64,000 nucleotides of DNA from Saccostrea echinata. Taxonomy: Eukaryota. The translations under genes were made by a program, and so were the position numbers. The notes beneath the pieces are model-generated. The model saw nothing but the letters and a program-made list of their open reading frames with translations, did not search any database and was not told where the DNA came from. This document shows, piece after piece, positions 51,202 to 64,000 of the stretch (position 1 is its first letter; each line of letters opens with the position of its first letter). The stretch covers positions 8,618,001 to 8,682,000 of the forward strand of contig NW_026889751.1 of the NCBI RefSeq assembly GCF_033153115.1, written 5' to 3'.

Positions 51202-54200
51202 ATGGAACGCAGGCATTTCCTGCCCTATGTATTGGGTATTATTGTATTAGGTTTACTAGAATTCTCCATCAGTGCCAGTGAGTACTATTTATATCGGTAC
51301 AAGGTAATCACTTAGAGTGAAGGAAACAGGAAAAATTAATTTCACTCTCTTACAAATTTCATCAAATTAGATTCATGTGAAAAAGAAACATTTAAAAACA
51401 TTTCTCTTTTACAAAATAGTTTGCTAGCCTGTAAACTTTCAATGTCTTCGCATGTAATGGTTTTGTCATTAAAAACTTTAAAAAGAAAATAAATAACCAG
51501 CAGAGCCTCAATAGGAAAAAAATCTGATGACAATTTCATGGTATCTTTTCTTAATTTCCACGTAAAACGTCAAAAGGTAATGTTTTCCCTTTTTGTAAGT
51601 AGGAATAAGGAATTCGGTAATGTGTCTGATGCAGATGATTTTTAAAACTTCCTATATTATTTTTTCATTCATTGTTTACAATGTTCTCAATGAAATTTAA
51701 AAAAAAATAATAATGATAAATAAGTAAAATAAAATAACAAAAATAAAAATCTTGCAATAAAAGTTTTGTTTTCTTTTCAGACTGAAAATATAACAAAACG
51801 GAAATTATCATAATTTTGCACATTTTCCAAAAAAAAAAATGCTGATCAATCTGTTCCATATTCAATATTTACTAAACCACGATACAGTAATAGAAGGTTG
51901 CAAAACAAAATGGGTCTCAAAGGTTTGGCATCTGAATGTATAAATCTGTATTTATGTACATGTATAAAGAAAGTACCGCCTTTTACAGATGAGTGCAAAT
52001 ATGAGGAAAAAATGCTCTCTTGTGAAAGCAGGAGAATACAGACAAGTAGTGGTCGAGAAAAGGAGATCAGAAAGCTTTGCAGACTGAATGTCCCAAAAGA
52101 AATAAAAGATTTAAAAATCAAACTTGTGAAGCAGGATAGTGTTTCCAAACCATGCATATATCAAAAGTCGTTCCGTCTGGTCAAGAAGAAGGGTATTAGA
52201 CATTTGGAAGTTCGTAATGGGTGTCGAGGAAAATTCAAGATCCGATATCGCAGGAAAAGTATGATTTCTTAATGTTCTTTTACCCGTCCTCGTTTATAAA
52301 GACTTTTCCCCAAACAGTTTCACATTCATTTCTTGACATTCATGTTTTATTTAGGTTTATTTTCTCAAAAGATTTTTGTAAAATTCCTTGCAACACAGAT
52401 TGCTCCAGAAAATGCGGCCCCAATGCTTTTTGGAAGAAGAGACGAAGAGGCAGAAGAGGCAAATGTCGATGTAAGAGAGGTTATCGTGGAAATCCAAAGA
52501 AGGGAGGATGTACTGGTAAGGTGATTTGTCCGAGCCCTGAATATTACAACTCTGTTAAAACAATTTTTTAAGAAACGACTAAATGAGAATACAAAAAGAA
52601 AATAAGCAACAAATAAGCAACAAACTAATAAAATTAACAAAAGATGGGCCCAGTTGCACTTTTCCCTCCGCTGTGCAATTTTGAAAAACCTCAATGGGAC
52701 ATGAACATGAATCACGAACATAACGACAACCCCTTCTATGTGAAAAATTAATATATTTGTAGAAATAAGTTGACGGAATTTAAAGAAAGATCTTGGATCC
52801 TGTTAAATATGACCCAAATCCATCTTTCTGTACAAATTTTTTCAGCTTCTTGTGTATGCCGAGCTTCTGGAGACCCACACTATTCTACATATGACGGTCA
52901 GAAAATCCACTTCATGGGCACTTGCAAGTACACGCTGACAAGAACATTGGGAAAGCAACCCTGTGCCTTTAACATCATGGTGTACAACGAAAGACGAAAC
53001 AACAAGAAATCAGTGTCCTATACCAAACAAGTGGATGTGGAAATTGGCAACAACAGAGTTTCACTATTCAAAGGCAAGATATCCCAGGTAGGAACCTTCA
53101 TGCACATCATTCTTCTTGTGAGTGGTGTTGCCATGGCCAAATACTAGTATGCGATGAAAACATGTATGATACATGGGTACTTTTTTGTTGGAGGGATTGT
53201 CTGATGACAAATGGAACTTGATTGTACCTGTTGGATTTGTAGGTCAATGAAAGAAATGTAAACATCACACAAATGCCCTTTGAAAAAGATGGCATTTTGT
53301 TGACGACTGTAGGGCGCCGTTTCGTCAAACTTCAATCACCATCTTGTGGATTGACCGTGCTTTGGGATGGCAAGCATTCTGTGGAAGTTTCTGCCGACAA
53401 GGGTAAGTACGGCGGCAAAATGACTGGAATCTGTGGGGACTGCAATGGAAAGAGAGATGACTTCCGCTTGGCCAATGGAACAAATGTATCACGATTGCCA
53501 GCAAAGGAAAAGTACAGAGAAATCGGAGATAGTTATCGCGTGACAGATGCAAAGAGTCCTATATCTGCGTGAGTACGACGTTTAACGTGGTCCGACAGTC
53601 AAGTTGCGTTCCCTGTATCGTTTGCACGTGCTATGAAATATCCATGAAAATTGTAAGAGTTGTTGATTTTCAGATGTGGTCCTACACCGGCATTTTCAAG
53701 TTGCACTCCGGAACAGACAAAGAGATTCAGTTCCAATGAAGCTTGTGGATTGATGGAGAGTACATCCGACGAAAATCCATTCAAGGAATGCGTCAAATGG
53801 ATGAAAACGACTAAAGATGCGGACGGAAACAGTCCATTTTCTTCTTGTCTTATTGATGCATGCAACAACGACGGAGCGAAGTTGAAGACAGTGACCTGCC
53901 CCGCGCTGGAGGAATTCGAAGAAATATGTGTAGAGAATGGCTACGCCCCACCAGAGGATAATATCTGGCGAAACATCACTTCCTGTTGTGAGCATTTGTA
54001 TTTCATACATGTATTTCTCATTGCCTGAAACTTTACTTTTAACTTCATAAGGGACTAACCCCGATTAATATCTTTTGAGTTGATTTCAATTGCTTCAAGA
54101 AATAATAATCGTAAGCATTTATTTAAAGCATTGGCAGAGGTTGAAAAATGCCATAAAAATGAGGAGTACGTAGAAGATGGAAGTGGATGTCCCAACACAT

Positions 54201-57200
54201 GCCTGTCCCCAAAGGCGGAAGAAACCTGTTCTGATCCTGATGTTGCAGGGTGTCAGTGTAAGAAAGGTTTTGTGAGAGATGGAGATATCTGCATACCTGT
54301 CAGTCAATGTGGATGCACTCTACTGAAGAAACGCGTTCCTGTACGGCATTACACTATTGTTTTCTTAAGCGATAAAACTTTTATTTGGAGGCAATAAAAA
54401 TTGATTTTACGCAAGTCTTTTTTACTTTAAAAAAAATCTTTTCTGTTTTGGATGTTAAAAATAGTTTTGAGAAATGAAGAAAAACCTGAACCCGAGAACA
54501 GTAATTTGATAAGGATAAAGAAACATTAAATACTTTAGATATTTAGAATAATTTGATTCTATCTGTAGGTTCATAAAATAACACGTTCTCGATATTGTAG
54601 GTAAATTCGAGCATACTTTCAGTAGACTGCAAACAGAGAATTTCATGCACTCTGAGGAACGGTGTTCCAAAAGTTATAGAAGAACCAGCAAAGTGTAGAA
54701 CTGACGAAATATGTCTGAATCTAAAAGGAAGAGGGGAATGTAAAAAAGGTAGTCTATATTCAACGGATTTTTTTCTGCTAAGAATTCGTTTAACGTAATT
54801 TCATTAGGCTATTGATGATCTCGTAAACGGAATAATAAATAAAGCCTTAAAATTAGAAACTTAAAAGTTGTAGTTTATGTGTATTTGGAGTTCAGGGTTA
54901 CCACATTTATCTTTATGTAATAACCAGATGAACGTTTTATTTTCATTTGTTGCTAAATTTAAAACTAAACACAGTTTACAGACACGATACAGATAATTCC
55001 TATTTGAAAATTAGAAAAAAAGTTTTTATTGAAAAAAAGCTACAAACCTGATGGGTTACAATTTTGTTAATTGTAAATATGAATTTCACAGCCCCAGCCA
55101 TCGTCGCTGAAGCACCCATTCCTCCTCCTAAAGCTAGCTCACCTGAAACTGGCCGTAAGTAATTTTATCATAACCGAGGTACAAAATTGATAGAGAAAGT
55201 TACAATCACACGAAATGTTGTGGACTAGCTTGAATCGTTAAAATAAACTTGGAACTAATATTTNNNNNNNNNNNNNNNNNNNNNNNNNNNNNNNNNNNNN
55301 NNNNNNNNNNNNNNNNNNNNNNNNNNNNNNNNNNNNNNNNNNNNNNNNNNNNNNNNNNNNNNNNNNNNNNNNNNNNNNNNNNNNNNNNNNNNNNNNNNNT
55401 TTTTTGGGGGGGGGGATCTACTTTTTATTTTACAAAACATAAAAAGTAGGGCATCAATATTCTATGTAAGTTAGGTAACGATATAATTTTATTGAATGAG
55501 ATGGCAATTGCCGGTAGATTGAATGAATAATAAATATTTCGATGCAGGTAAATGTAAAAAAGAGAAAAAGGTTGTGAGATGTGCAAGCCGTAGATTACAA
55601 CTCAGTAGTGGTCGACAGAAGGAGATCAAGAAGCTTTGTAGACTGGGGAATACCAGAGAAATTGAAGACGTCAGAGTCCAACTGGTCAAGCAAGATAAAG
55701 TGTCTAAACCTTGCATCAACAAAAAGTCGTTTCGCTTACTCAAGAGGAAAGGGAGATGGCATTTGGAAGTTCGCAATGGTTGTCGAGGGAAATTCAAGAT
55801 CCGATATCGCAGGAAAAGTAAGATTTCAAATAAGTTTATTTCTCATTCTCAGAGAATTTGATTTCCTATATTAATTCCCATGTTAAGTACATTGTTACTG
55901 AGCTTGTCGTAAGATATATGATCCTTTGTTTACGACGTAGATTGCTCCAGAAAATGCGGTCCCAATGCTGTTTGGAAGAAGAGACGAAGAGGCAGAGGAG
56001 GCAAATGTCGATGCAAGAGAGGTTATCGTGGAAATCCAAAGAAGGGAGGATGTACTGGTAAGATGATTTGTGAGTCTTGAAACTTACAATACGATGGAAA
56101 CAGTTTTTGAAAAAATATGACCAAAATCTATAAACCAAAACAAACTAACAAAAAAAAAATCATTTAAAAAAACAACAGCATAAAAAGTTCCCATTTTTCA
56201 TGTGCTAATGAAACTTACATACCGATACTTGTACATGAATTTAGTTGGTAATCTTGACAACTCCTCTTTATTTGCAAATTGATACATTTGTGGGGGAAAA
56301 AGTTGACAATATGTTGAGGAACTTGTCAAGATGAAATAATGGATTTTGGATATTGATGACCATGATCCAAATCCCATCTCTCTGTCCAATTCTCTTTCAG
56401 CTTCTTGTGTATGCCGAGCTTCTGGAGACCCACACTATTCTACATATGACGGTCAGAAAATCCACTTCATGGGCACTTGCAAGTACACGCTGACAAGAAC
56501 ATTGGGAAAGCAACCCTGTGCCTTTAACATCATGGTGTACAACGAAAGACGAAACAACAAGAAATCAGTGTCCTATACCAAACAAGTGGATGTGGAAATT
56601 GGCAACAACAGAGTTTCACTATTCAAAGGCAAGATATCCCAGGTAGGAACCTTCATGCACATCATTCTTCTTGTGAGTGGTGTTGCCATGGCCAAATACT
56701 AGTATGCGATGAAAACATGTATGATACATGGGTACTTTTTTGTTGGAGGGATTGTCTGATGACAAATGGAACTTGATTGTACCTGTTGGATTTGTAGGTC
56801 AATGAAAGAAATGTAAACATCACACAAATGCCCTTTGAAAAAGATGGCATTTTGTTGACGACTGTAGGGCGCCGTTTCGTCAAACTTCAATCACCATCTT
56901 GTGGATTGACCGTGCTTTGGGATGGCAAGCATTCTGTGGAAGTTTCTGCCGACAAGGGTAAGTACGGCGGCAAAATGACTGGAATCTGTGGGGACTGCAA
57001 TGGAAAGAGAGATGACTTCCGCTTGGCCAATGGAACAAATGTATCACGATTGCCAGCAAAGGAAAAGTACAGAGAAATCGGAGATAGTTATCGCGTGACA
57101 GATGCAAAGAGTCCTATATCTGCGTGAGTACGACGTTTAACGTGGTCCGACAGTCAAGTTGCGTTCCCTGTATCGTTTGCACGTGCTATGAAATATCCAT

Positions 57201-60200
57201 GAAAATTGTAAGAGTTGTTGATTTTCAGATGTGGTCCTACACCGGCATTTTCAAGTTGCACTCCGGAACAGACAAAGAGATTCAGTTCCAATGAAGCTTG
57301 TGGATTGATGGAGAGTACATCCGACGAAAATCCATTCAAGGAATGCGTCAAATGGATGAAAACGACTAAAGATGCGGACGGAAACAGTCCATTTTCTTCT
57401 TGTCTTATTGATGCATGCAACAACGACGGAGCGAAGTTGAAGACAGTGACCTGCCCCGCGCTGGAGGAATTCGAAGAAATATGTGTAGAGAATGGCTACG
57501 CCCCACCAGAGGATAATATCTGGCGAAACATCACTTCCTGTTGTGAGCATTTGTATTTCATACATGTATTTCTAATTGCCTGAAACTTTACTTTTAACTT
57601 CATAAGGGACTAACCCCGATTAATATCTTTTGAGTTGATTTCAATTGCTTCAAGAAATAATAATCGTAAGCATTTATTTAAAGCATTGGCAGAGGTTGAA
57701 AAATGCCATAAAAATGAGGAGTACGTAGAAGATGGAAGTGGATGTCCCAACACATGCCTGTCCCCAAAGGCGGAAGAAACCTGTTCTGATCCTGATGTTG
57801 CAGGGTGTCAGTGTAAGAAAGGTTTTGTGAGAGATGGAGATATCTGCATACCTGTCAGTCAATGTGGATGCACTCTACTGAAGAAACGCGTTCCTGTACG
57901 GCATTACACTATTGTTTTCTTAAGCGATAAAACTTTTATTTGGAGGCAATAAAAATTGATTTTACGCAAGTCTTTTTTACTTTAAAAAAAATCTTTTCTG
58001 TTTTGGATGTTAAAAATAGTTTTGAGAAATGAAGAAAAACCTGAACCCGAGAACAGTAATTTGATAAGGATAAAGAAACATTAAATACTTTAGATATTTA
58101 GAATAATTTGATTCTATCTGTAGGTTCATAAAATAACACGTTCTCGATATTGTAGGTAAATTCGAGCATACTTTCAGTAGACTGCAAACAGAGAATTTCA
58201 TGCACTCTGAGGAACGGTGTTCCAAAAGTTATAGAAGAACCAGCAAAGTGTAGAACTGACGAAATATGTCTGAATCTAAAAGGAAGAGGGGAATGTAAAA
58301 AAGGTAGTCTATATTCAACGGATTTTTTTCTGCTAAGAATTCGTTTAACGTAATTTCATTAGGCTATTGATGATCTCGTAAACGGAATAATAAATAAAGC
58401 CTTAAAATTAGAAACTTAAAAGTTGTAGTTTATGTGTATTTGGAGTTCAGGGTTACCACATTTATCTTTATGTAATAACCAGATGAACGTTTTATTTTCA
58501 TTTGTTGCTAAATTTAAAACTAAACACAGTTTACAGACACGATACAGATAATTCCTATTTGAAAATTAGAAAAAAAGTTTTTATTGAAAAAAAGCTACAA
58601 ACCTGATGGGTTACAATTTTGTTAATTGTAAATATGAATTTCACAGCCCCAGCCATCGTCGCTGAAGCACCCATTCCTCCTCCTAAAGCTAGCTCACCTG
58701 AAACTGGCCGTAAGTAATTTTATCATAACCGAGGTACAAAATTGATAGAGAAAGTTACAATCACACGAAATGTTGTGGACTAGCTTGAATCGTTAAAATA
58801 AACTTGGAACTAATATTTNNNNNNNNNNNNNNNNNNNNNNNNNNNNNNNNNNNNNNNNNNNNNNNNNNNNNNNNNNNNNNNNNNNNNNNNNNNNNNNNNN
58901 NNNNNNNNNNNNNNNNNNNNNNNNNNNNNNNNNNNNNNNNNNNNNNNNNNAAGTGACTTTTTTGGGGGGGGGGGGGATCTACTTTTTATTTTACAAAACA
59001 TAAAAAGTAGGGCATCAATATTCTATGTAAGTTAGGTAACGATATAATTTTATTGAATGAGATGGCAATTGCCGGTAGATTGAATGAATAATAAATATTT
59101 CGATGCAGGTAAATGTAAAAAAGAGAAAAAGGTTGTGAGATGTGCAAGCCGTAGATTACAACTCAGTAGTGGTCGACAGAAGGAGATCAAGAAGCTTTGT
59201 AGACTGGGGAATACCAGAGAAATTGAAGACGTCAGAGTCCAACTGGTCAAGCAAGATAAAGTGTCTAAACCTTGCATCAACAAAAAGTCGTTTCGCTTAC
59301 TCAAGAGGAAAGGGAGATGGCATTTGGAAGTTCGCAATGGTTGTCGAGGGAAATTCAAGATCCGATATCGCAGGAAAAGTAAGATTTCAAATAAGTTTAT
59401 TTCTCATTCTCAGAGAATTTGATTTCCTATATTAATTCCCATGTTAAGTACATTGTTACTGAGCTTGTCGTAAGATATATGATCCTTTGTTTACGACGTA
59501 GATTGCTCCAGAAAATGCGGTCCCAATGCTGTTTGGAAGAAGAGACGAAGAGGCAGAGGAGGCAAATGTCGATGCAAGAGAGGTTATCGTGGAAATCCAA
59601 AGAAGGGAGGATGTACTGGTAAGATGATTTGTGAGTCTTGAAACTTACAATACGATGGAAACAGTTTTTGAAAAAATATGACCAAAATCTATAAACCAAA
59701 ACAAACTAACAAAAAAAAAATCATTTAAAAAAACAACAGCATAAAAAGTTCCCATTTTTCATGTGCTAATGAAACTTACATACCGATACTTGTACATGAA
59801 TTTAGTTGGTAATCTTGACAACTCCTCTTTATTTGCAAATTGATACATTTGTGGGGGAAAAAGTTGACAATATGTTGAGGAACTTGTCAAGATGAAATAA
59901 TGGATTTTGGATATTGATGACCATGATCCAAATCCCATCTCTCTGTCCAATTCTCTTTCAGCTTCTTGTGTATGCCGAGCTTCTGGAGACCCACACTATT
60001 CTACATATGACGGTCAGAAAATCCACTTCATGGGCACTTGCAAGTACACGCTGACAAGAACATTGGGAAAGCAACCCTGTGCCTTTAACATCATGGTGTA
60101 CAACGAAAGACGAAACAACAAGAAATCAGTGTCCTATACCAAACAAGTGGATGTGGAAATTGGCAACAACAGAGTTTCACTATTCAAAGGCAAGATATCC

Positions 60201-63200
60201 CAGGTAGGAACCTTCATGCACATCATTCTTCTTGTGAGTGGTGTTGCCATGGCCAAATACTAGTATGCGATGAAAACATGTATGATACATGGGTACTTTT
60301 TTGTTGGAGGGATTGTCTGATGACAAATGGAACTTGATTGTACCTGTTGGATTTGTAGGTCAATGAAAGAAATGTAAACATCACACAAATGCCCTTTGAA
60401 AAAGATGGCATTTTGTTGACGACTGTAGGGCGCCGTTTCGTCAAACTTCAATCACCATCTTGTGGATTGACCGTGCTTTGGGATGGCAAGCATTCTGTGG
60501 AAGTTTCTGCCGACAAGGGTAAGTACGGCGGCAAAATGACTGGAATCTGTGGGGACTGCAATGGAAAGAGAGATGACTTCCGCTTGGCCAATGGAACAAA
60601 TGTATCACGATTGCCAGCAAAGGAAAAGTACAGAGAAATCGGAGATAGTTATCGCGTGACAGATGCAAAGAGTCCTATATCTGCGTGAGTACGACGTTTA
60701 ACGTGGTCCGACAGACAAGTTGCGTTCCCTGTATCGTTTGCACGTGCTATGAAATATCCATGAAAATTGTAAGAGTTGTTGATTTTCAGATGTGGTCCTA
60801 CACCGGCATTTTCAAGTTGCACTCCGGAACAGACAAAGAGATTCAGTTCCAATGAAGCTTGTGGATTGATGGAGAGTACATCCGACGAAAATCCATTCAA
60901 GGAATGCGTCAAATGGATGAAAACGACTAAAGATGCGGACGGAAACAGTCCATTTTCTTCTTGTCTTATTGATGCATGCAACAACGACGGAGCGAAGTTG
61001 AAGACAGTGACCTGCCCCGCGCTGGAGGAATTCGAAGAAATATGTGTAGAGAATGGCTACGCCCCACCAGAGGATAATATCTGGCGAAACATCACTTCCT
61101 GTTGTGAGCATTTGTATTTCATACATGTATTTCTCATTGCCTGAAACTTTACTTTTAACTTCATAAGGGACTAACCCCGATTAATATCTTTTGAGTTGAT
61201 TTCAATTGCTTCAAGAAATAATAATCGTAAGCATTTATTTAAAGCATTGGCAGAGGTTGAAAAATGCCATAAAAATGAGGAGTACGTAGAAGATGGAAGT
61301 GGATGTCCCAACACATGCCTGTCCCCAAAGGCGGAAGAAACCTGTTCTGATCCTGATGTTGTCAGTGTAAGAAAGGTTTTGTGAGAGATGGAGATATCTG
61401 CATACCTGTCAGTCAATGTGGATGCACTCTACTGAAGAAACGCGTTCCTGTACGGCATTACACTATTGTTTTCTTAAGCGATAAAACTTTTATTTGGAGG
61501 CAATAAAAATTGATTTTACGCAAGTCTTTTTTACTTTAAAAAAAATCTTTTCTGTTTTGGATGTTAAAAATAGTTTTGAGAAATGAAGAAAAACCTGAAC
61601 CCGAGAACAGTAATTTGATAAGGATAAAGAAACATTAAATACTTTAGATATTTAGAATAATTTGATTCTATCTGTAGGTTCATAAAATAACACGTTCTCG
61701 ATATTGTAGGTAAATTCGAGCATACTTTCAGTAGACTGCAAACAGAGAATTTCATGCACTCTGAGGAACGGTGTTCCAAAAGTTATAGAAGAACCAGCAA
61801 AGTGTAGAACTGACGAAATATGTCTGAATCTAAAAGGAAGAGGGGAATGTAAAAAAGGTAGTCTATATTCAACGGATTTTTTTCTGCTAAGAATTCGTTT
61901 AACGTAATTTCATTAGGCTATTGATGATCTCGTAAACGGAATAATAAATAAAGCCTTAAAATTAGAAACTTAAAAGTTGTAGTTTATGTGTATTTGGAGT
62001 TCAGGGTTACCACATTTATCTTTATGTAATAACCAGATGAACGTTTTATTTTCATTTGTTGCTAAATTTAAAACTAAACACAGTTTACAGACACGATACA
62101 GATAATTCCTATTTGAAAATTAGAAAAAAAGTTTTTATTGAAAAAAAGCTACAAACCTGATGGGTTACAATTTTGTTAATTGTAAATATGAATTTCACAG
62201 CCCCAGCCATCGTCGCTGAAGCACCCATTCCTCCTCCTAAAGCTAGCTCACCTGAAACTGGCCGTAAGTAATTTTATCATAACCGAGGTACAAAATTGAT
62301 AGAGAAAGTTACAATCACACGAAATGTTGTGGACTAGCTTGAATCGTTAAAATAAACTTGGAACTAATATTTNNNNNNNNNNNNNNNNNNNNNNNNNNNN
62401 NNNNNNNNNNNNNNNNNNNNNNNNNNNNNNNNNNNNNNNNNNNNNNNNNNNNNNNNNNNNNNNNNNNNNNNNNNNNNNNNNNNNNNNNNNNNNNNNNNNN
62501 NNNAAGTGACTTTTTTTGGGGGGGGGGGGGGGATCTACTTTTTATTTTACAAAACATAAAAAGTAGGGCATCAATATTCTATGTAAGTTAGGTAACGATA
62601 TAATTTTATTGAATGAGATGGCAATTGCCGGTAGATTGAATGAATAATAAATATTTCGATGCAGGTAAATGTAAAAAAGAGAAAAAGGTTGTGAGATGTG
62701 CAAGCCGTAGATTACAACTCAGTAGTGGTCGACAGAAGGAGATCAAGAAGCTTTGTAGACTGGGGAATACCAGAGAAATTGAAGACGTCAGAGTCCAACT
62801 GGTCAAGCAAGATAAAGTGTCTAAACCTTGCATCAACAAAAAGTCGTTTCGCTTACTCAAGAGGAAAGGGAGATGGCATTTGGAAGTTCGCAATGGTTGT
62901 CGAGGGAAATTCAAGATCCGATATCGCAGGAAAAGTAAGATTTCAAATAAGTTTATTTCTCATTCTCAGAGAATTTGATTTCCTATATTAATTCCCATGT
63001 TAAGTACATTGTTACTGAGCTTGTCGTAAGATATATGATCCTTTGTTTACGACGTAGATTGCTCCAGAAAATGCGGTCCCAATGCTGTTTGGAAGAAGAG
63101 ACGAAGAGGCAGAGGAGGCAAATGTCGATGCAAGAGAGGTTATCGTGGAAATCCAAAGAAGGGAGGATGTACTGGTAAGATGATTTGTGAGTCTTGAAAC

Positions 63201-64000
63201 TTACAATACGATGGAAACAGTTTTTGAAAAAATATGACCAAAATCTATAAACCAAAACAAACTAACAAAAAAAAAATCATTTAAAAAAACAACAGCATAA
63301 AAAGTTCCCATTTTTCATGTGCTAATGAAACTTACATACCGATACTTGTACATGAATTTAGTTGGTAATCTTGACAACTCCTCTTTATTTGCAAATTGAT
63401 ACATTTGTGGGGGAAAAAGTTGACAATATGTTGAGGAACTTGTCAAGATGAAATAATGGATTTTGGATATTGATGACCATGATCCAAATCCCATCTCTCT
63501 GTCCAATTCTCTTTCAGCTTCTTGTGTATGCCGAGCTTCTGGAGACCCACACTATTCTACATATGACGGTCAGAAAATCCACTTCATGGGCACTTGCAAG
63601 TACACGCTGACAAGAACATTGGGAAAGCAACCCTGTGCCTTTAACATCATGGTGTACAACGAAAGACGAAACAACAAGAAATCAGTGTCCTATACCAAAC
63701 AAGTGGATGTGGAAATTGGCAACAACAGAGTTTCACTATTCAAAGGCAAGATATCCCAGGTAGGAACCTTCATGCACATCATTCTTCTTGTGAGTGGTGT
63801 TGCCATGGCCAAATACTAGTATGCGATGAAAACATGTATGATACATGGGTACTTTTTTGTTGGAGGGATTGTCTGATGACAAATGGAACTTGATTGTACC
63901 TGTTGGATTTGTAGGTCAATGAAAGAAATGTAAACATCACACAAATGCCCTTTGAAAAAGATGGCATTTTGTTGACGACTGTAGGGCGCCGTTTCGTCAA
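51202..64000 (+). CDS. Secreted zonadhesin/FCGBP-like multi-repeat VWD-C8-TIL protein with lectin-like and EGF-like modules (3' end beyond the window)
   Basis: TATATAAG at ~51162. Signal-peptide exon 51202-51277 (MERRHFLPYVLGIIVLGLLEFSISA). Cassette 1 exons: 51989-52258, 52399-52515, 52846-53087 (ASGDPHYSTYDG), 53243-53568 (GICGDCNG), 53674-53987 (C8-like), 54129-54340 (TIL), 54601-54748 (TILa-like), 55092-55154 (Pro-rich). Cassettes 2, 3 and 4 start at 55548, 59109 and 62665. Intron phases are compatible throughout, but cassette 3 has a 7-bp deletion. Confidence 0.85.
52841..64000 (+). repeat. Near-identical ~3.56-kb tandem repeat (3 full periods plus the start of a fourth)
   Basis: The GDPH exon starts at 52846, 56401, 59962 and 63518 (periods 3555, 3561, 3556). 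The ORF track shows identical peptides, and introns are also near-identical. Confidence 0.98.

What the first reader, a model, noticed from the sequence alone, without database searches (positions are those of the whole stretch)
51202..64000. Secreted polyprotein with an unusual repeating module: lectin-like + EGF + GDPH-VWD/C8/TIL/TILa + Pro linker
Seen: one signal-peptide exon is followed by an 8-exon cassette bounded by phase-1 introns and repeated in frame at least four times. Known: FCGBP, zonadhesin and tectorin repeat VWD-C8-TIL-TILa units directly. Here each unit also carries a ~90-aa basic domain, an EGF-like domain and a Pro-rich spacer; I do not recognise this architecture from a named protein. 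Inference: a polymeric extracellular (mucus, adhesive, shell or egg-coat) protein presenting many cationic glycan-binding heads. This is the best candidate for an undescribed system in the window.
Basis: partly seen in the sequence, partly recalled or inferred. Interest (0 to 1): 0.8.

Follow-up and report, generated by a model that had tools for sequence, protein, structure and literature searches.

The report
Oyster FCGBP-like giant protein with lectin-like heads
This is the start of a giant secreted oyster protein, related to the mucus protein FCGBP, in which every repeated unit also carries a very positively charged lectin-like domain; related oysters have the same unstudied gene under generic names, so it is a new variant of a known kind.

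Summary
The observation mostly holds. A signal-peptide exon (51202-51277) is followed by an 8-exon cassette of 1692 nt (564 codons) bounded by phase-1 introns. The window holds four copies; the fourth is cut at 64000. The three N runs lie in the intron between the Pro-linker exon and the next basic-domain exon, so they touch no codon. One flaw: as assembled, copy 3 lacks 7 nt in its TIL exon, which shifts the frame and gives a stop at 61382.

The array continues beyond the window. There are 9 near-identical units, one diverged unit, two more VWD assemblies and about 13 EGF exons. The gene spans about 55 kb and predicts over 7000 aa.

VWD, C8 and TIL pass Pfam cut-offs, and the closest solved structure is FCGBP. 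The basic domain is a diverged single DUF3011 repeat, the fold of the Aplysia galacturonic-acid-binding egg lectins. The EGF-like exon is a degenerate EGF. "TILa" was not confirmed.

The architecture is not unique. RefSeq models in Magallana angulata (6720 aa), Ostrea edulis and Saccostrea cucullata carry the basic domain; a UniProt Magallana gigas model is related but lacks it. In Magallana and Ostrea it occurs once per three VWD modules; here it occurs in every module. No characterised protein matches.

My reading is a GDPH-cleaved, disulfide-held matrix, mucus or adhesive protein with polycationic heads that bind acidic glycans. No RNA or read data could be obtained.

The parts
51202..51277 (+). 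Exon 1: start codon and signal-peptide-like sequence, phase-1 donor
   Evidence: Not tested with a signal-peptide predictor.
51989..52258 (+). Unit 0 exon A: basic DUF3011-like domain, diverged copy (70% aa to the other units)
52399..52515 (+). Unit 0 exon B: degenerate basic EGF-like domain (Cys3 replaced by Trp)
52846..53087 (+). Unit 0 exon C: N-terminal half of VWD with CRASGDPHY
53243..53568 (+). Unit 0 exon D: C-terminal half of VWD
53674..53987 (+). Unit 0 exon E: C8
54129..54340 (+). Unit 0 exon F: TIL
54601..54748 (+). Unit 0 exon G: Cys-rich module after TIL (E/TILa position, no Pfam hit)
55092..55154 (+). Unit 0 exon H: Pro-rich linker
55264..55399 (.). N run inside the H-to-A intron
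55548..55817 (+). Unit 1 exon A: basic DUF3011-like domain (net +26, 5 Cys)
55941..56057 (+). Unit 1 exon B: degenerate EGF-like domain (net +15, 5 Cys)
56401..56642 (+). Unit 1 exon C: N-terminal half of VWD, GDPH
   Evidence: (VWD E 3.2e-16)
56798..57123 (+). Unit 1 exon D: C-terminal half of VWD
   Evidence: VWD E 2.9e-9
57229..57542 (+). Unit 1 exon E: C8
   Evidence: C8 29.5 bits, cut-off 23.7
57684..57895 (+). Unit 1 exon F: TIL. The donor after ...KKRVP was chosen from the relatives' junctions.
   Evidence: (TIL E 2.4e-10)
58156..58303 (+). Unit 1 exon G: Cys-rich E/TILa-position module
58647..58709 (+). Unit 1 exon H: Pro-rich linker
58819..58950 (.). N run inside the H-to-A intron
59109..59378 (+). 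Unit 2 exon A
59502..59618 (+). Unit 2 exon B
59962..60203 (+). Unit 2 exon C
60359..60684 (+). Unit 2 exon D
60790..61103 (+). Unit 2 exon E
61245..61449 (+). Unit 2 exon F. It has a 7-nt deletion after 61359, which shifts the frame and gives a stop at 61382 as assembled.
61710..61857 (+). Unit 2 exon G
62201..62263 (+). Unit 2 exon H
62373..62503 (.). N run inside the H-to-A intron
62665..62934 (+). Unit 3 exon A
63058..63174 (+). Unit 3 exon B
63518..63759 (+). Unit 3 exon C
63915..64000 (+). Unit 3 exon D, cut by the window end. It runs to 64240 in extended coordinates, and the gene goes on to about 106219 (G000:C2:8724219).

Best explanation
The stretch is the 5' quarter of one very large oyster gene. 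It spans about 55 kb, has roughly 110 exons and predicts more than 7000 aa. The product is a secreted FCGBP-type protein.

Shown by sequence:
- A signal exon is followed by ten modules. Each module is a single, highly basic DUF3011-type lectin-like repeat, a degenerate basic EGF, a VWD-C8-TIL assembly plus a Cys-rich module, and a short Pro-rich linker.
- Two further VWD assemblies without GDPH and about 13 EGF/EB exons follow.
- Every one of the ten VWDs has the motif C-R-A-S-G-D-P-H-Y. The Cys lies 5 residues before the Asp, as in human FCGBP.

Inferred:
- As in FCGBP, each Asp-Pro bond cleaves itself in the ER, and the pieces stay joined by one disulfide per VWD. The secreted product would be a long, protease-resistant, disulfide-stitched chain.
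- The A+B heads (net +41 in 127 residues, no acidic residue in B) sit directly upstream of each cleavage site. They act as multivalent binders of acidic glycans such as uronic-acid or sulfated polysaccharides. This follows the galacturonic-acid specificity of the only characterised DUF3011 proteins.
- One molecule would thus cross-link polyanionic matrix in mucus, larval cement or a similar extracellular gel.
- The near-identity of the units, introns included, reflects recent amplification or ongoing concerted evolution. This has happened separately in each oyster genus.
For: Gene structure.

D-assembly domains: Pfam VWD E 3e-16 and 3e-9, C8 29.5 bits (cut-off 23.7), TIL E 2e-10. For the spliced M. 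gigas orthologue, the closest solved chains are FCGBP 8rde at E 1e-188, against VWF at about 1e-41.

GDPH: the GDPH context matches the FCGBP vWD1 peptide ...VCRAQGD|PHYTTFDG. FCGBP is cleaved at all GDPH sites and held together by one disulfide per VWD (PMC8267560; PMC10880436).

DUF3011 homology of exon A:
- Pfam DUF3011 is sub-threshold but consistent on five A-like sequences (E 5e-4 to 3e-2).
- A 3-sequence profile searched against 1.84 billion proteins hits only six proteins. One is a bona fide DUF3011 protein at E 2.1e-5, which itself scores 2e-24 in Pfam.
- hhalign gives 93% probability, E 2.8e-7.
- The ESM Atlas top three clusters are all DUF3011.
- AlphaFold gives a confident all-beta model, pLDDT 90.

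Ligand precedent: DUF3011 lectin AKL binds galacturonic acid (PMC5484111).

Charge and Cys counts.

Splice junctions: the junctions A|B, B|C, G|H and H|A are those used in independent RefSeq models of O. edulis, M. angulata and S. cucullata.

Real copies: units carry shared variant patterns, so they are distinct copies rather than one copy pasted repeatedly.

Position of the head: Mytilus homologues place a WSC carbohydrate-binding domain and a canonical 6-Cys EGF in the same position before a GDPH VWD.
Against: There is no transcript, protein or read evidence for this genome.

As assembled, unit 2 has a frameshift. If real, it would truncate the protein after about 2.7 modules.

The DUF3011 match is below Pfam's cut-off (17.7 against 25 bits). 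No solved structure resembles the model clearly: the best Foldseek E is 0.3 and the best VIA Z is 6.4. No PDB sequence hit was found.

Sugar binding by a single repeat with this extreme charge is unproven. AKL has three repeats.

In FCGBP the residue 14 positions after the Asp is Gln, and mutating it partly reduces cleavage. Here it is Met.

Exons A, B and H are all symmetric (phase 1-1), so they could be skipped in transcripts.
Confidence: 0.55

Rival explanations
1. The heads work by charge alone, not as lectins. The A+B segment is a polycationic anchor. It sticks to negatively charged surfaces such as biofilm, periostracum or mineral, or it drives coacervation with acidic partner proteins. 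The DUF3011 fold would be only a scaffold.
For: A has net +26 and B has net +15 with no acidic residue. Domain A evolves fast: it is 35-67% identical between oyster genera, while the VWD, C8 and TIL exons stay 68-86% identical. The DUF3011 match is sub-threshold.
Against: The Cys pattern and the ...S.PC...SF...V.NGCRG.F..Y core are conserved from bacteria to oysters. This argues that the fold and possibly a binding site are kept. The known ligand of the family is itself an acidic sugar, so the two readings overlap.
Confidence: 0.2
2. It is a mucosal immune component. An FCGBP-like mucus protein would use its cationic lectin-like heads to agglutinate or kill microbes, rather than to build an adhesive or matrix.
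For: FCGBP is a mucus protein. IgGFc-binding proteins are reported in oyster mucus and rise at metamorphosis. AKL-type lectins are reported to have antimicrobial activity (title and abstract of PMC8306185).
Against: The proteins in those papers were not linked to this gene. No expression data exist for this genome.
Confidence: 0.12
3. The array is partly an artefact or the gene is decaying. The copy number would be inflated by assembly of a near-identical tandem repeat, and the 7-nt deletion would mark a pseudogene or a consensus error.
For: Units are 99.4-99.9% identical, introns included. An N run sits at the same place in three units. Unit 2 has a frameshift. No reads were available to check.
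Against: Units differ by shared, patterned variants, and their spacing varies from 3530 to 3561 nt. Orthologues in three other oyster species show the same kind of long, homogenised array, with 14 GDPH sites in the M. angulata model. All other exons in all ten units are open, with intact splice sites.
Confidence: 0.1

Closest known systems
Human/mouse FCGBP (IgGFc-binding protein)
   Same: Both are secreted and built of many tandem VWD-C8-TIL-E assemblies. GDPH is present in most VWDs, with a Cys 5 residues upstream that holds the cleaved pieces together. The internal repeats are homogenised; human FCGBP has three VWD triplets (PMC8267560). FCGBP is also by far the best PDB match for the spliced M. 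gigas orthologue.
   Different: FCGBP has no DUF3011-like domain, no EGF before each VWD and no Pro linker. It has its own N-terminal domain, whereas here the signal exon is followed directly by domain A. This gene also has a tail of about 13 EGF/EB exons.
Oyster RefSeq/UniProt models: IgGFc-binding protein-like XP_052697478.1 (Magallana angulata), K1PIX3 and K1PR13 (M. gigas), zonadhesin-like XP_056022045/47/48 (Ostrea edulis), XP_062614735.1 (Saccostrea cucullata)
   Same: These are orthologues. They have the same B-C-D-E-F-G module at 63-96% identity, the same splice junctions, and domain A in the same position before B.
   Different: In Magallana and Ostrea, domain A occurs once per three modules and there is no Pro linker between modules. 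Here, and in S. cucullata, A and H are in every module. All of these are computed models. None is characterised and none has domain A annotated. The S. cucullata model reads exon B in the wrong frame.
DUF3011 lectins AKL/ADEL of Aplysia eggs (PF11218)
   Same: Domain A aligns with one DUF3011 repeat. It shares the Cys framework and the GCRG.F..Y end. The family's known ligand is an acidic sugar, galacturonic acid (PMC5484111).
   Different: AKL is a small free lectin with three repeats. Here a single repeat sits on one symmetric exon inside a giant VWD protein. It is far more basic and scores below Pfam's cut-off. AKL/ADEL were not among the six proteins my profile search returned at E 1e-3 or better.
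Mytilus 'zonadhesin' models (M. coruscus P0027, M. galloprovincialis P0028)
   Same: A canonical EGF directly precedes a GDPH VWD-C8-TIL assembly, and a carbohydrate-binding domain sits at the head.
   Different: The head is a WSC domain, not DUF3011. The EGF keeps all six Cys and is not hyper-basic. Identity is only about 33%.

Membership tests
FCGBP/zonadhesin-type proteins with repeated D assemblies | VWD domain (PF00094) above Pfam's cut-off | tested here: met
   exon C 60.5 bits and exon D 37.8 bits, against a cut-off of 22.9
FCGBP/zonadhesin-type proteins with repeated D assemblies | C8 and TIL follow each VWD | tested here: met
   C8 29.5 bits (cut-off 23.7); TIL 40.8 bits (cut-off 24.5)
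FCGBP/zonadhesin-type proteins with repeated D assemblies | E/TILa module after TIL | tested here: inconclusive
   There is no Pfam hit for exon G at E up to 1, nor in spliced relatives. Only its position and a 5-Cys pattern fit.
FCGBP/zonadhesin-type proteins with repeated D assemblies | Many D assemblies in tandem in one secreted chain | tested here: met
   Ten modules plus two further VWD assemblies follow one signal exon. Whether they form a single transcript was not tested.
FCGBP/zonadhesin-type proteins with repeated D assemblies | GDPH autocleavage site with an upstream Cys for the inter-fragment disulfide | tested here: met
   The motif C-R-A-S-G-D-P-H-Y is in all ten modules, compared with the FCGBP peptide in PMC8267560. 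Cleavage itself cannot be tested with these tools.
FCGBP/zonadhesin-type proteins with repeated D assemblies | FCGBP-specific N-terminal domain before the first VWD | tested here: not met
   The signal exon splices directly to domain A. The relation is therefore to the family, not orthology to vertebrate FCGBP.
DUF3011 (PF11218) lectin family | Pfam hit above the gathering score | tested here: not met
   17.7 bits against 25. By contrast, canonical DUF3011 exons elsewhere in this genome score 33-39 bits.
DUF3011 (PF11218) lectin family | Remote homology by profile methods | tested here: met
   The profile hits a true DUF3011 protein at E 2.1e-5 in 1.84 billion proteins. hhalign gives 93%, E 2.8e-7. 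ESM Atlas top hits are all DUF3011.
DUF3011 (PF11218) lectin family | Three tandem repeats, as in AKL/ADEL | tested here: not met
   There is one repeat per module, on one 270-nt exon.
DUF3011 (PF11218) lectin family | Binds galacturonic acid or another sugar | not testable with these tools
   This needs recombinant protein and glycan binding assays.
EGF domain | Six-Cys framework and a Pfam EGF hit | tested here: not met
   Cys3 is replaced by Trp, leaving 5 Cys. EGF_3 scores E 0.03, 15 bits against a cut-off of 28.5. It is positionally equivalent to a canonical 6-Cys EGF before the VWD in Mytilus, so it is a degenerate EGF.
Gel-forming mucins | Long PTS (mucin) domain and a C-terminal cystine knot | tested here: not met
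   Only 21-aa Pro linkers are present. The last exons give no CTCK hit.

The most novel reading that the evidence does not exclude
The head and the cleavage site may form one device. After GD|PH self-cleavage, each fragment ends in ...DUF3011-like - EGF-like - ASCVCRASGD, which carries a reactive Asp anhydride a few residues from a +41 polyanion-binding head. The head would dock an acidic polysaccharide so that the anhydride esterifies it, as the ITIH heavy chains do with chondroitin sulfate. One molecule with ten such sites would then be a self-activating covalent cross-linker, a glycan-templated glue such as oyster larval cement. Oyster genera would tune the head density: one head per module in Saccostrea, one per three modules in Magallana and Ostrea.
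Probability: 0.08. Interest if true: 0.8.

Novelty: new variant of a known kind. Interest (0 to 1): 0.45.

Why it matters
The function of FCGBP-type proteins is still poorly understood (PMC8267560), and oyster cement is hard to study by proteomics (PMC6337334). This gene gives a concrete, testable candidate: a giant D-assembly protein that carries ten polycationic lectin-like heads next to ten self-cleavage sites.

It also shows a DUF3011 repeat, a domain family known mostly from bacteria, recruited by exon shuffling on a symmetric exon into an animal matrix protein. The repeat is then homogenised at different periodicities in sister genera. Current annotation calls these genes 'zonadhesin-like' or 'IgGFc-binding protein-like' and misses the extra domain entirely.

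Tried and rejected
Searches and tools that gave nothing:
- PDB sequence searches with domain A, alone and as a profile, found nothing.
- NCBIfam found nothing useful.
- Fold searches of the confident domain A model gave only weak, common beta-sandwich matches. The best were an H-type lectin at E 0.3, and phage depolymerase C-terminal domains and discoidin I at Z 5.6-6.4, below the tool's stated noise level of 7-8. I make no fold assignment from them.
- The look-up of sequencing runs listed no run. Splicing, copy number and the 7-nt deletion remain unchecked.
- A word search restricted to domain A found only the S. cucullata model in its length range.

Leads that could not be closed:
- I tried to tie the M. 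gigas orthologues K1PIX3 and K1PR13 to the pediveliger-specific models CGI_10010553-557 of PMC6337334. This failed: no paper holds those accessions together and no supplements are held. The link stays a lead, based only on matching domain order.

Ideas rejected:
- A conserved furin site at the A/B junction. RYRR|K is present here, but the site reads RYRKK in Ostrea and TYQEK in Magallana.
- An overlapping gene on the minus strand. Only antisense shadows of the exons are seen.
Full report
**What is there**

The window is G000:C2:8618001-8682000 of a 923-Mb, 425-contig genome. The closest public protein is from Saccostrea cucullata, at 81-96% identity per exon. The host is therefore an oyster, probably a Saccostrea.

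From 51202 on the + strand, an ATG opens a 26-codon signal-peptide-like exon that ends in a phase-1 donor. Eight exons follow:
- A, 270 nt
- B, 117 nt
- C, 242 nt
- D, 326 nt
- E, 314 nt
- F, 212 nt
- G, 148 nt
- H, 63 nt

All have AG/GT borders. The intron phases, from the intron before A to the intron after H, are 1,1,1,0,2,1,0,1,1. Together the exons make 1692 nt (564 codons). The cassette begins and ends in phase 1, so copies follow one another in frame. The donor of F was set after ...KKRVP because the diverged tenth unit and the relatives' models use that junction.

**Repeat and gaps**

The cassette recurs every 3555-3561 nt. Units 1-3 in the window are about 99.9% identical, introns included. 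Unit 0 differs only in A (70% aa) and B (96.6% nt), and becomes identical just upstream of the first VWD acceptor.

The three N runs all lie in the H-to-A intron, between a GT donor and an AG acceptor of matching phase, so the reading frame does not depend on them. The H-to-A intron is 393-401 nt in the gap-bearing units and 369-397 nt in the gap-free units outside the window. I compared lengths only and did not inspect the letters of other copies.

Physical continuity could not be tested. The look-up of sequencing runs listed no run.

**A flaw in the 'in frame' claim**

Unit 2 lacks 7 nt in exon F after 61359. As assembled, this shifts the frame and gives a stop at 61382. It is the only broken exon among the 80 exons of the ten units. 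Without reads, I cannot tell whether it is a real allele or a consensus error in a near-identical array.

**Extent**

The array goes on beyond the window:
- There are nine near-identical units (0-8).
- A diverged H exon follows 1.4 kb after unit 8.
- A tenth unit is 65-89% identical at the protein level.
- After it come a linker exon and an EGF exon.
- Next is a VWD-C8-TIL assembly without GDPH.
- About 13 EGF/EB-type exons follow.
- A last VWD-C8-TIL-EGF assembly and a terminal Cys-rich exon end near extended coordinate 106219.
- A dihydroxyacetone-kinase-like gene follows at about 110000.

Units 1-8 differ at 2-16 positions over about 2.76 kb, with variants shared in patterns among units. 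They are therefore distinct copies, not one copy pasted repeatedly.

**Domains**

| Exon(s) | Result |
|---|---|
| C + D | VWD, E 3e-16 and 3e-9 |
| E | C8, 29.5 bits against a 23.7 cut-off |
| F | TIL, E 2e-10 |
| G | No Pfam hit, here or in spliced relatives; 'TILa' rests on position and Cys pattern only |
| B | EGF_3 at E 0.03 only |

- **Exon B.** Its Cys3 is replaced by Trp. It sits exactly where Mytilus homologues have a canonical six-Cys EGF before the VWD, so it is a degenerate EGF.
- **D assembly.** With the spliced M. gigas orthologue as query, FCGBP is by far the closest solved structure, at E 1e-188 against about 1e-41 for VWF.
- **GDPH.** Each of the ten VWDs has C-R-A-S-G-D-P-H-Y. 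This has the same spacing as the FCGBP peptide ...VCRAQGD|PHY. In FCGBP that Asp-Pro bond cleaves itself, and that Cys forms the single disulfide holding the fragments together (PMC8267560; PMC10880436).

**The basic domain**

Exon A encodes 89 residues with 33 Lys+Arg, net charge +26, pI 11.2 and five Cys. Exon B adds +15 with no acidic residue.

The evidence that A is a DUF3011 repeat:
- Pfam gives DUF3011 at E 0.0035, below the cut-off.
- A three-sequence profile was searched against 1.84 billion representative proteins. It found six proteins. One is the S. cucullata model. Four are short exon-like fragments, of which one matches the Magallana A exon and one resembles the Ostrea A exon. The sixth is a genuine DUF3011 protein, hit at E 2.1e-5 and scoring 2e-24 in Pfam.
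- hhalign of ten A-like sequences against that protein gives 93% probability, E 2.8e-7, over 87 columns.
- The ESM Atlas's three nearest clusters are all DUF3011.

AlphaFold gives a confident all-beta model, pLDDT 90. No solved structure matches it clearly, and no PDB sequence matches.

I conclude that A is a diverged single DUF3011 repeat. The only characterised DUF3011 proteins, the Aplysia egg lectins, have three such repeats and bind galacturonic acid (PMC5484111).

**Is the architecture new?**

No. Word-based and cluster searches retrieve named orthologues:
- zonadhesin-like proteins of Ostrea edulis
- IgGFc-binding protein K1PIX3 and zonadhesin K1PR13 of Magallana gigas
- a 6720-aa IgGFc-binding protein-like model of M. 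angulata, XP_052697478.1

Exon-by-exon BLAST and an HMM of domain A show that these carry the same B-C-D-E-F-G module at 63-86% identity. Domain A is in the same place, but only once per three modules. In the M. angulata model it lies at residues 5, 1421, 2855, 4289 and 5723. There is no Pro linker between modules.

Their A|B and B|C junctions are the ones I derived here. The S. cucullata model uses the same G|H|A junctions, although it then reads exon B in the wrong frame.

Within each species the modules are about 99% identical, while between genera they are 63-86% identical. This indicates concerted evolution in each lineage. The Saccostrea form is thus a variant in which a one-module unit, including A and H, has taken over the array.

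None of these proteins is characterised, and Pfam annotation does not show domain A in them.

**Function**

The identity as an FCGBP-type secreted protein is well supported. The rest is inference.

I propose the following. The chain is cleaved at each GD|PH and stays disulfide-linked. The polycationic DUF3011-like/EGF heads, which lie immediately upstream of each cleavage site, bind acidic glycans. One molecule then cross-links polyanionic matrix.

A lead for the tissue comes from M. gigas. Five adjacent 'IgGFc-binding protein (zonadhesin-like)' models, with VWD/TIL, then seven EGFs, then VWD+EGF, are specific to the pediveliger stage. They have been proposed as components of the larval adhesive (PMC6337334). 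That domain order mirrors this locus. I could not show that they are the same gene.

Rival readings are charge-only adhesion, a mucosal immune role, and an assembly-inflated or decaying array.

**Other DUF3011 exons in this genome**

The genome also holds three canonical single-exon DUF3011 repeats on contig C9, scoring 33-39 bits. They are flanked by EGF-like, kringle and WSC exons. One lies about 4 kb downstream of EGF-VWD-C8-TIL exons on the same strand. Single DUF3011 repeats therefore appear to be a shuffled module in oyster secreted proteins. Exon A is phase 1-1, which fits that.

**Limits**

- The spliced model was searched exon by exon, by reference.
- No RNA or DNA reads were available.

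Noticed in passing
window 61245-61449 (unit 2 exon F): A 7-nt deletion (TGCAGGG, after 61359) is unique to this unit among the nine near-identical ones. It shifts the frame and gives a stop at 61382 as assembled.
   Followed up: partly
L035, L036, L037 (G000:C9:45796913-45797149, 45678287-45678502, 45634960-45635169, minus strand) and L013: Three canonical single-exon DUF3011 repeats score above Pfam's cut-off. They are flanked by EGF-like, kringle and WSC exons. EGF-VWD-C8-TIL exons lie about 4 kb upstream of one of them on the same strand. This is probably a second family of multidomain DUF3011 genes, possibly another VWD+DUF3011 gene.
   Followed up: partly
P0031 (M. angulata XP_052697478.1), P0036 (O. 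edulis XP_056022045.1) compared with window units: Domain A occurs once per three VWD modules in Magallana and Ostrea, but once per module here and in S. cucullata. The modules are about 99% identical within each species. This shows lineage-specific concerted evolution with different repeat units.
   Followed up: yes
window 55941-56057 and P0031 modules: The EGF-like exon lacks Cys3 in Magallana modules that have no domain A before them (35 Cys per module).
   Followed up: partly
P0001 (S. cucullata XP_062614735.1), residues about 468-506: This RefSeq model leaves domain A through an internal donor and reads the EGF-like exon in the wrong frame. The public model of the closest relative is faulty there.
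   Followed up: yes
extended coordinates about 110000-113300 (G000:C2:8728000-8731300), + strand: The next gene downstream looks like a dihydroxyacetone kinase/triokinase (motif ...LLCGGGSGHEPAHAG). It marks the 3' limit of the giant gene.
   Followed up: no
window 55400-55416, 58951-58975, 62504-62530: The right flank of each N run starts with a T-run followed by a G-run. The unread or masked piece may therefore be low-complexity intron sequence. The letters were not looked up.
   Followed up: no
P0027 (Mytilus coruscus), residues 156-280: The mussel homologue has a WSC carbohydrate-binding domain and a canonical EGF before its GDPH VWD. A glycan-binding head before the D assembly may be a wider bivalve theme, with different domains filling the slot.
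   Followed up: partly
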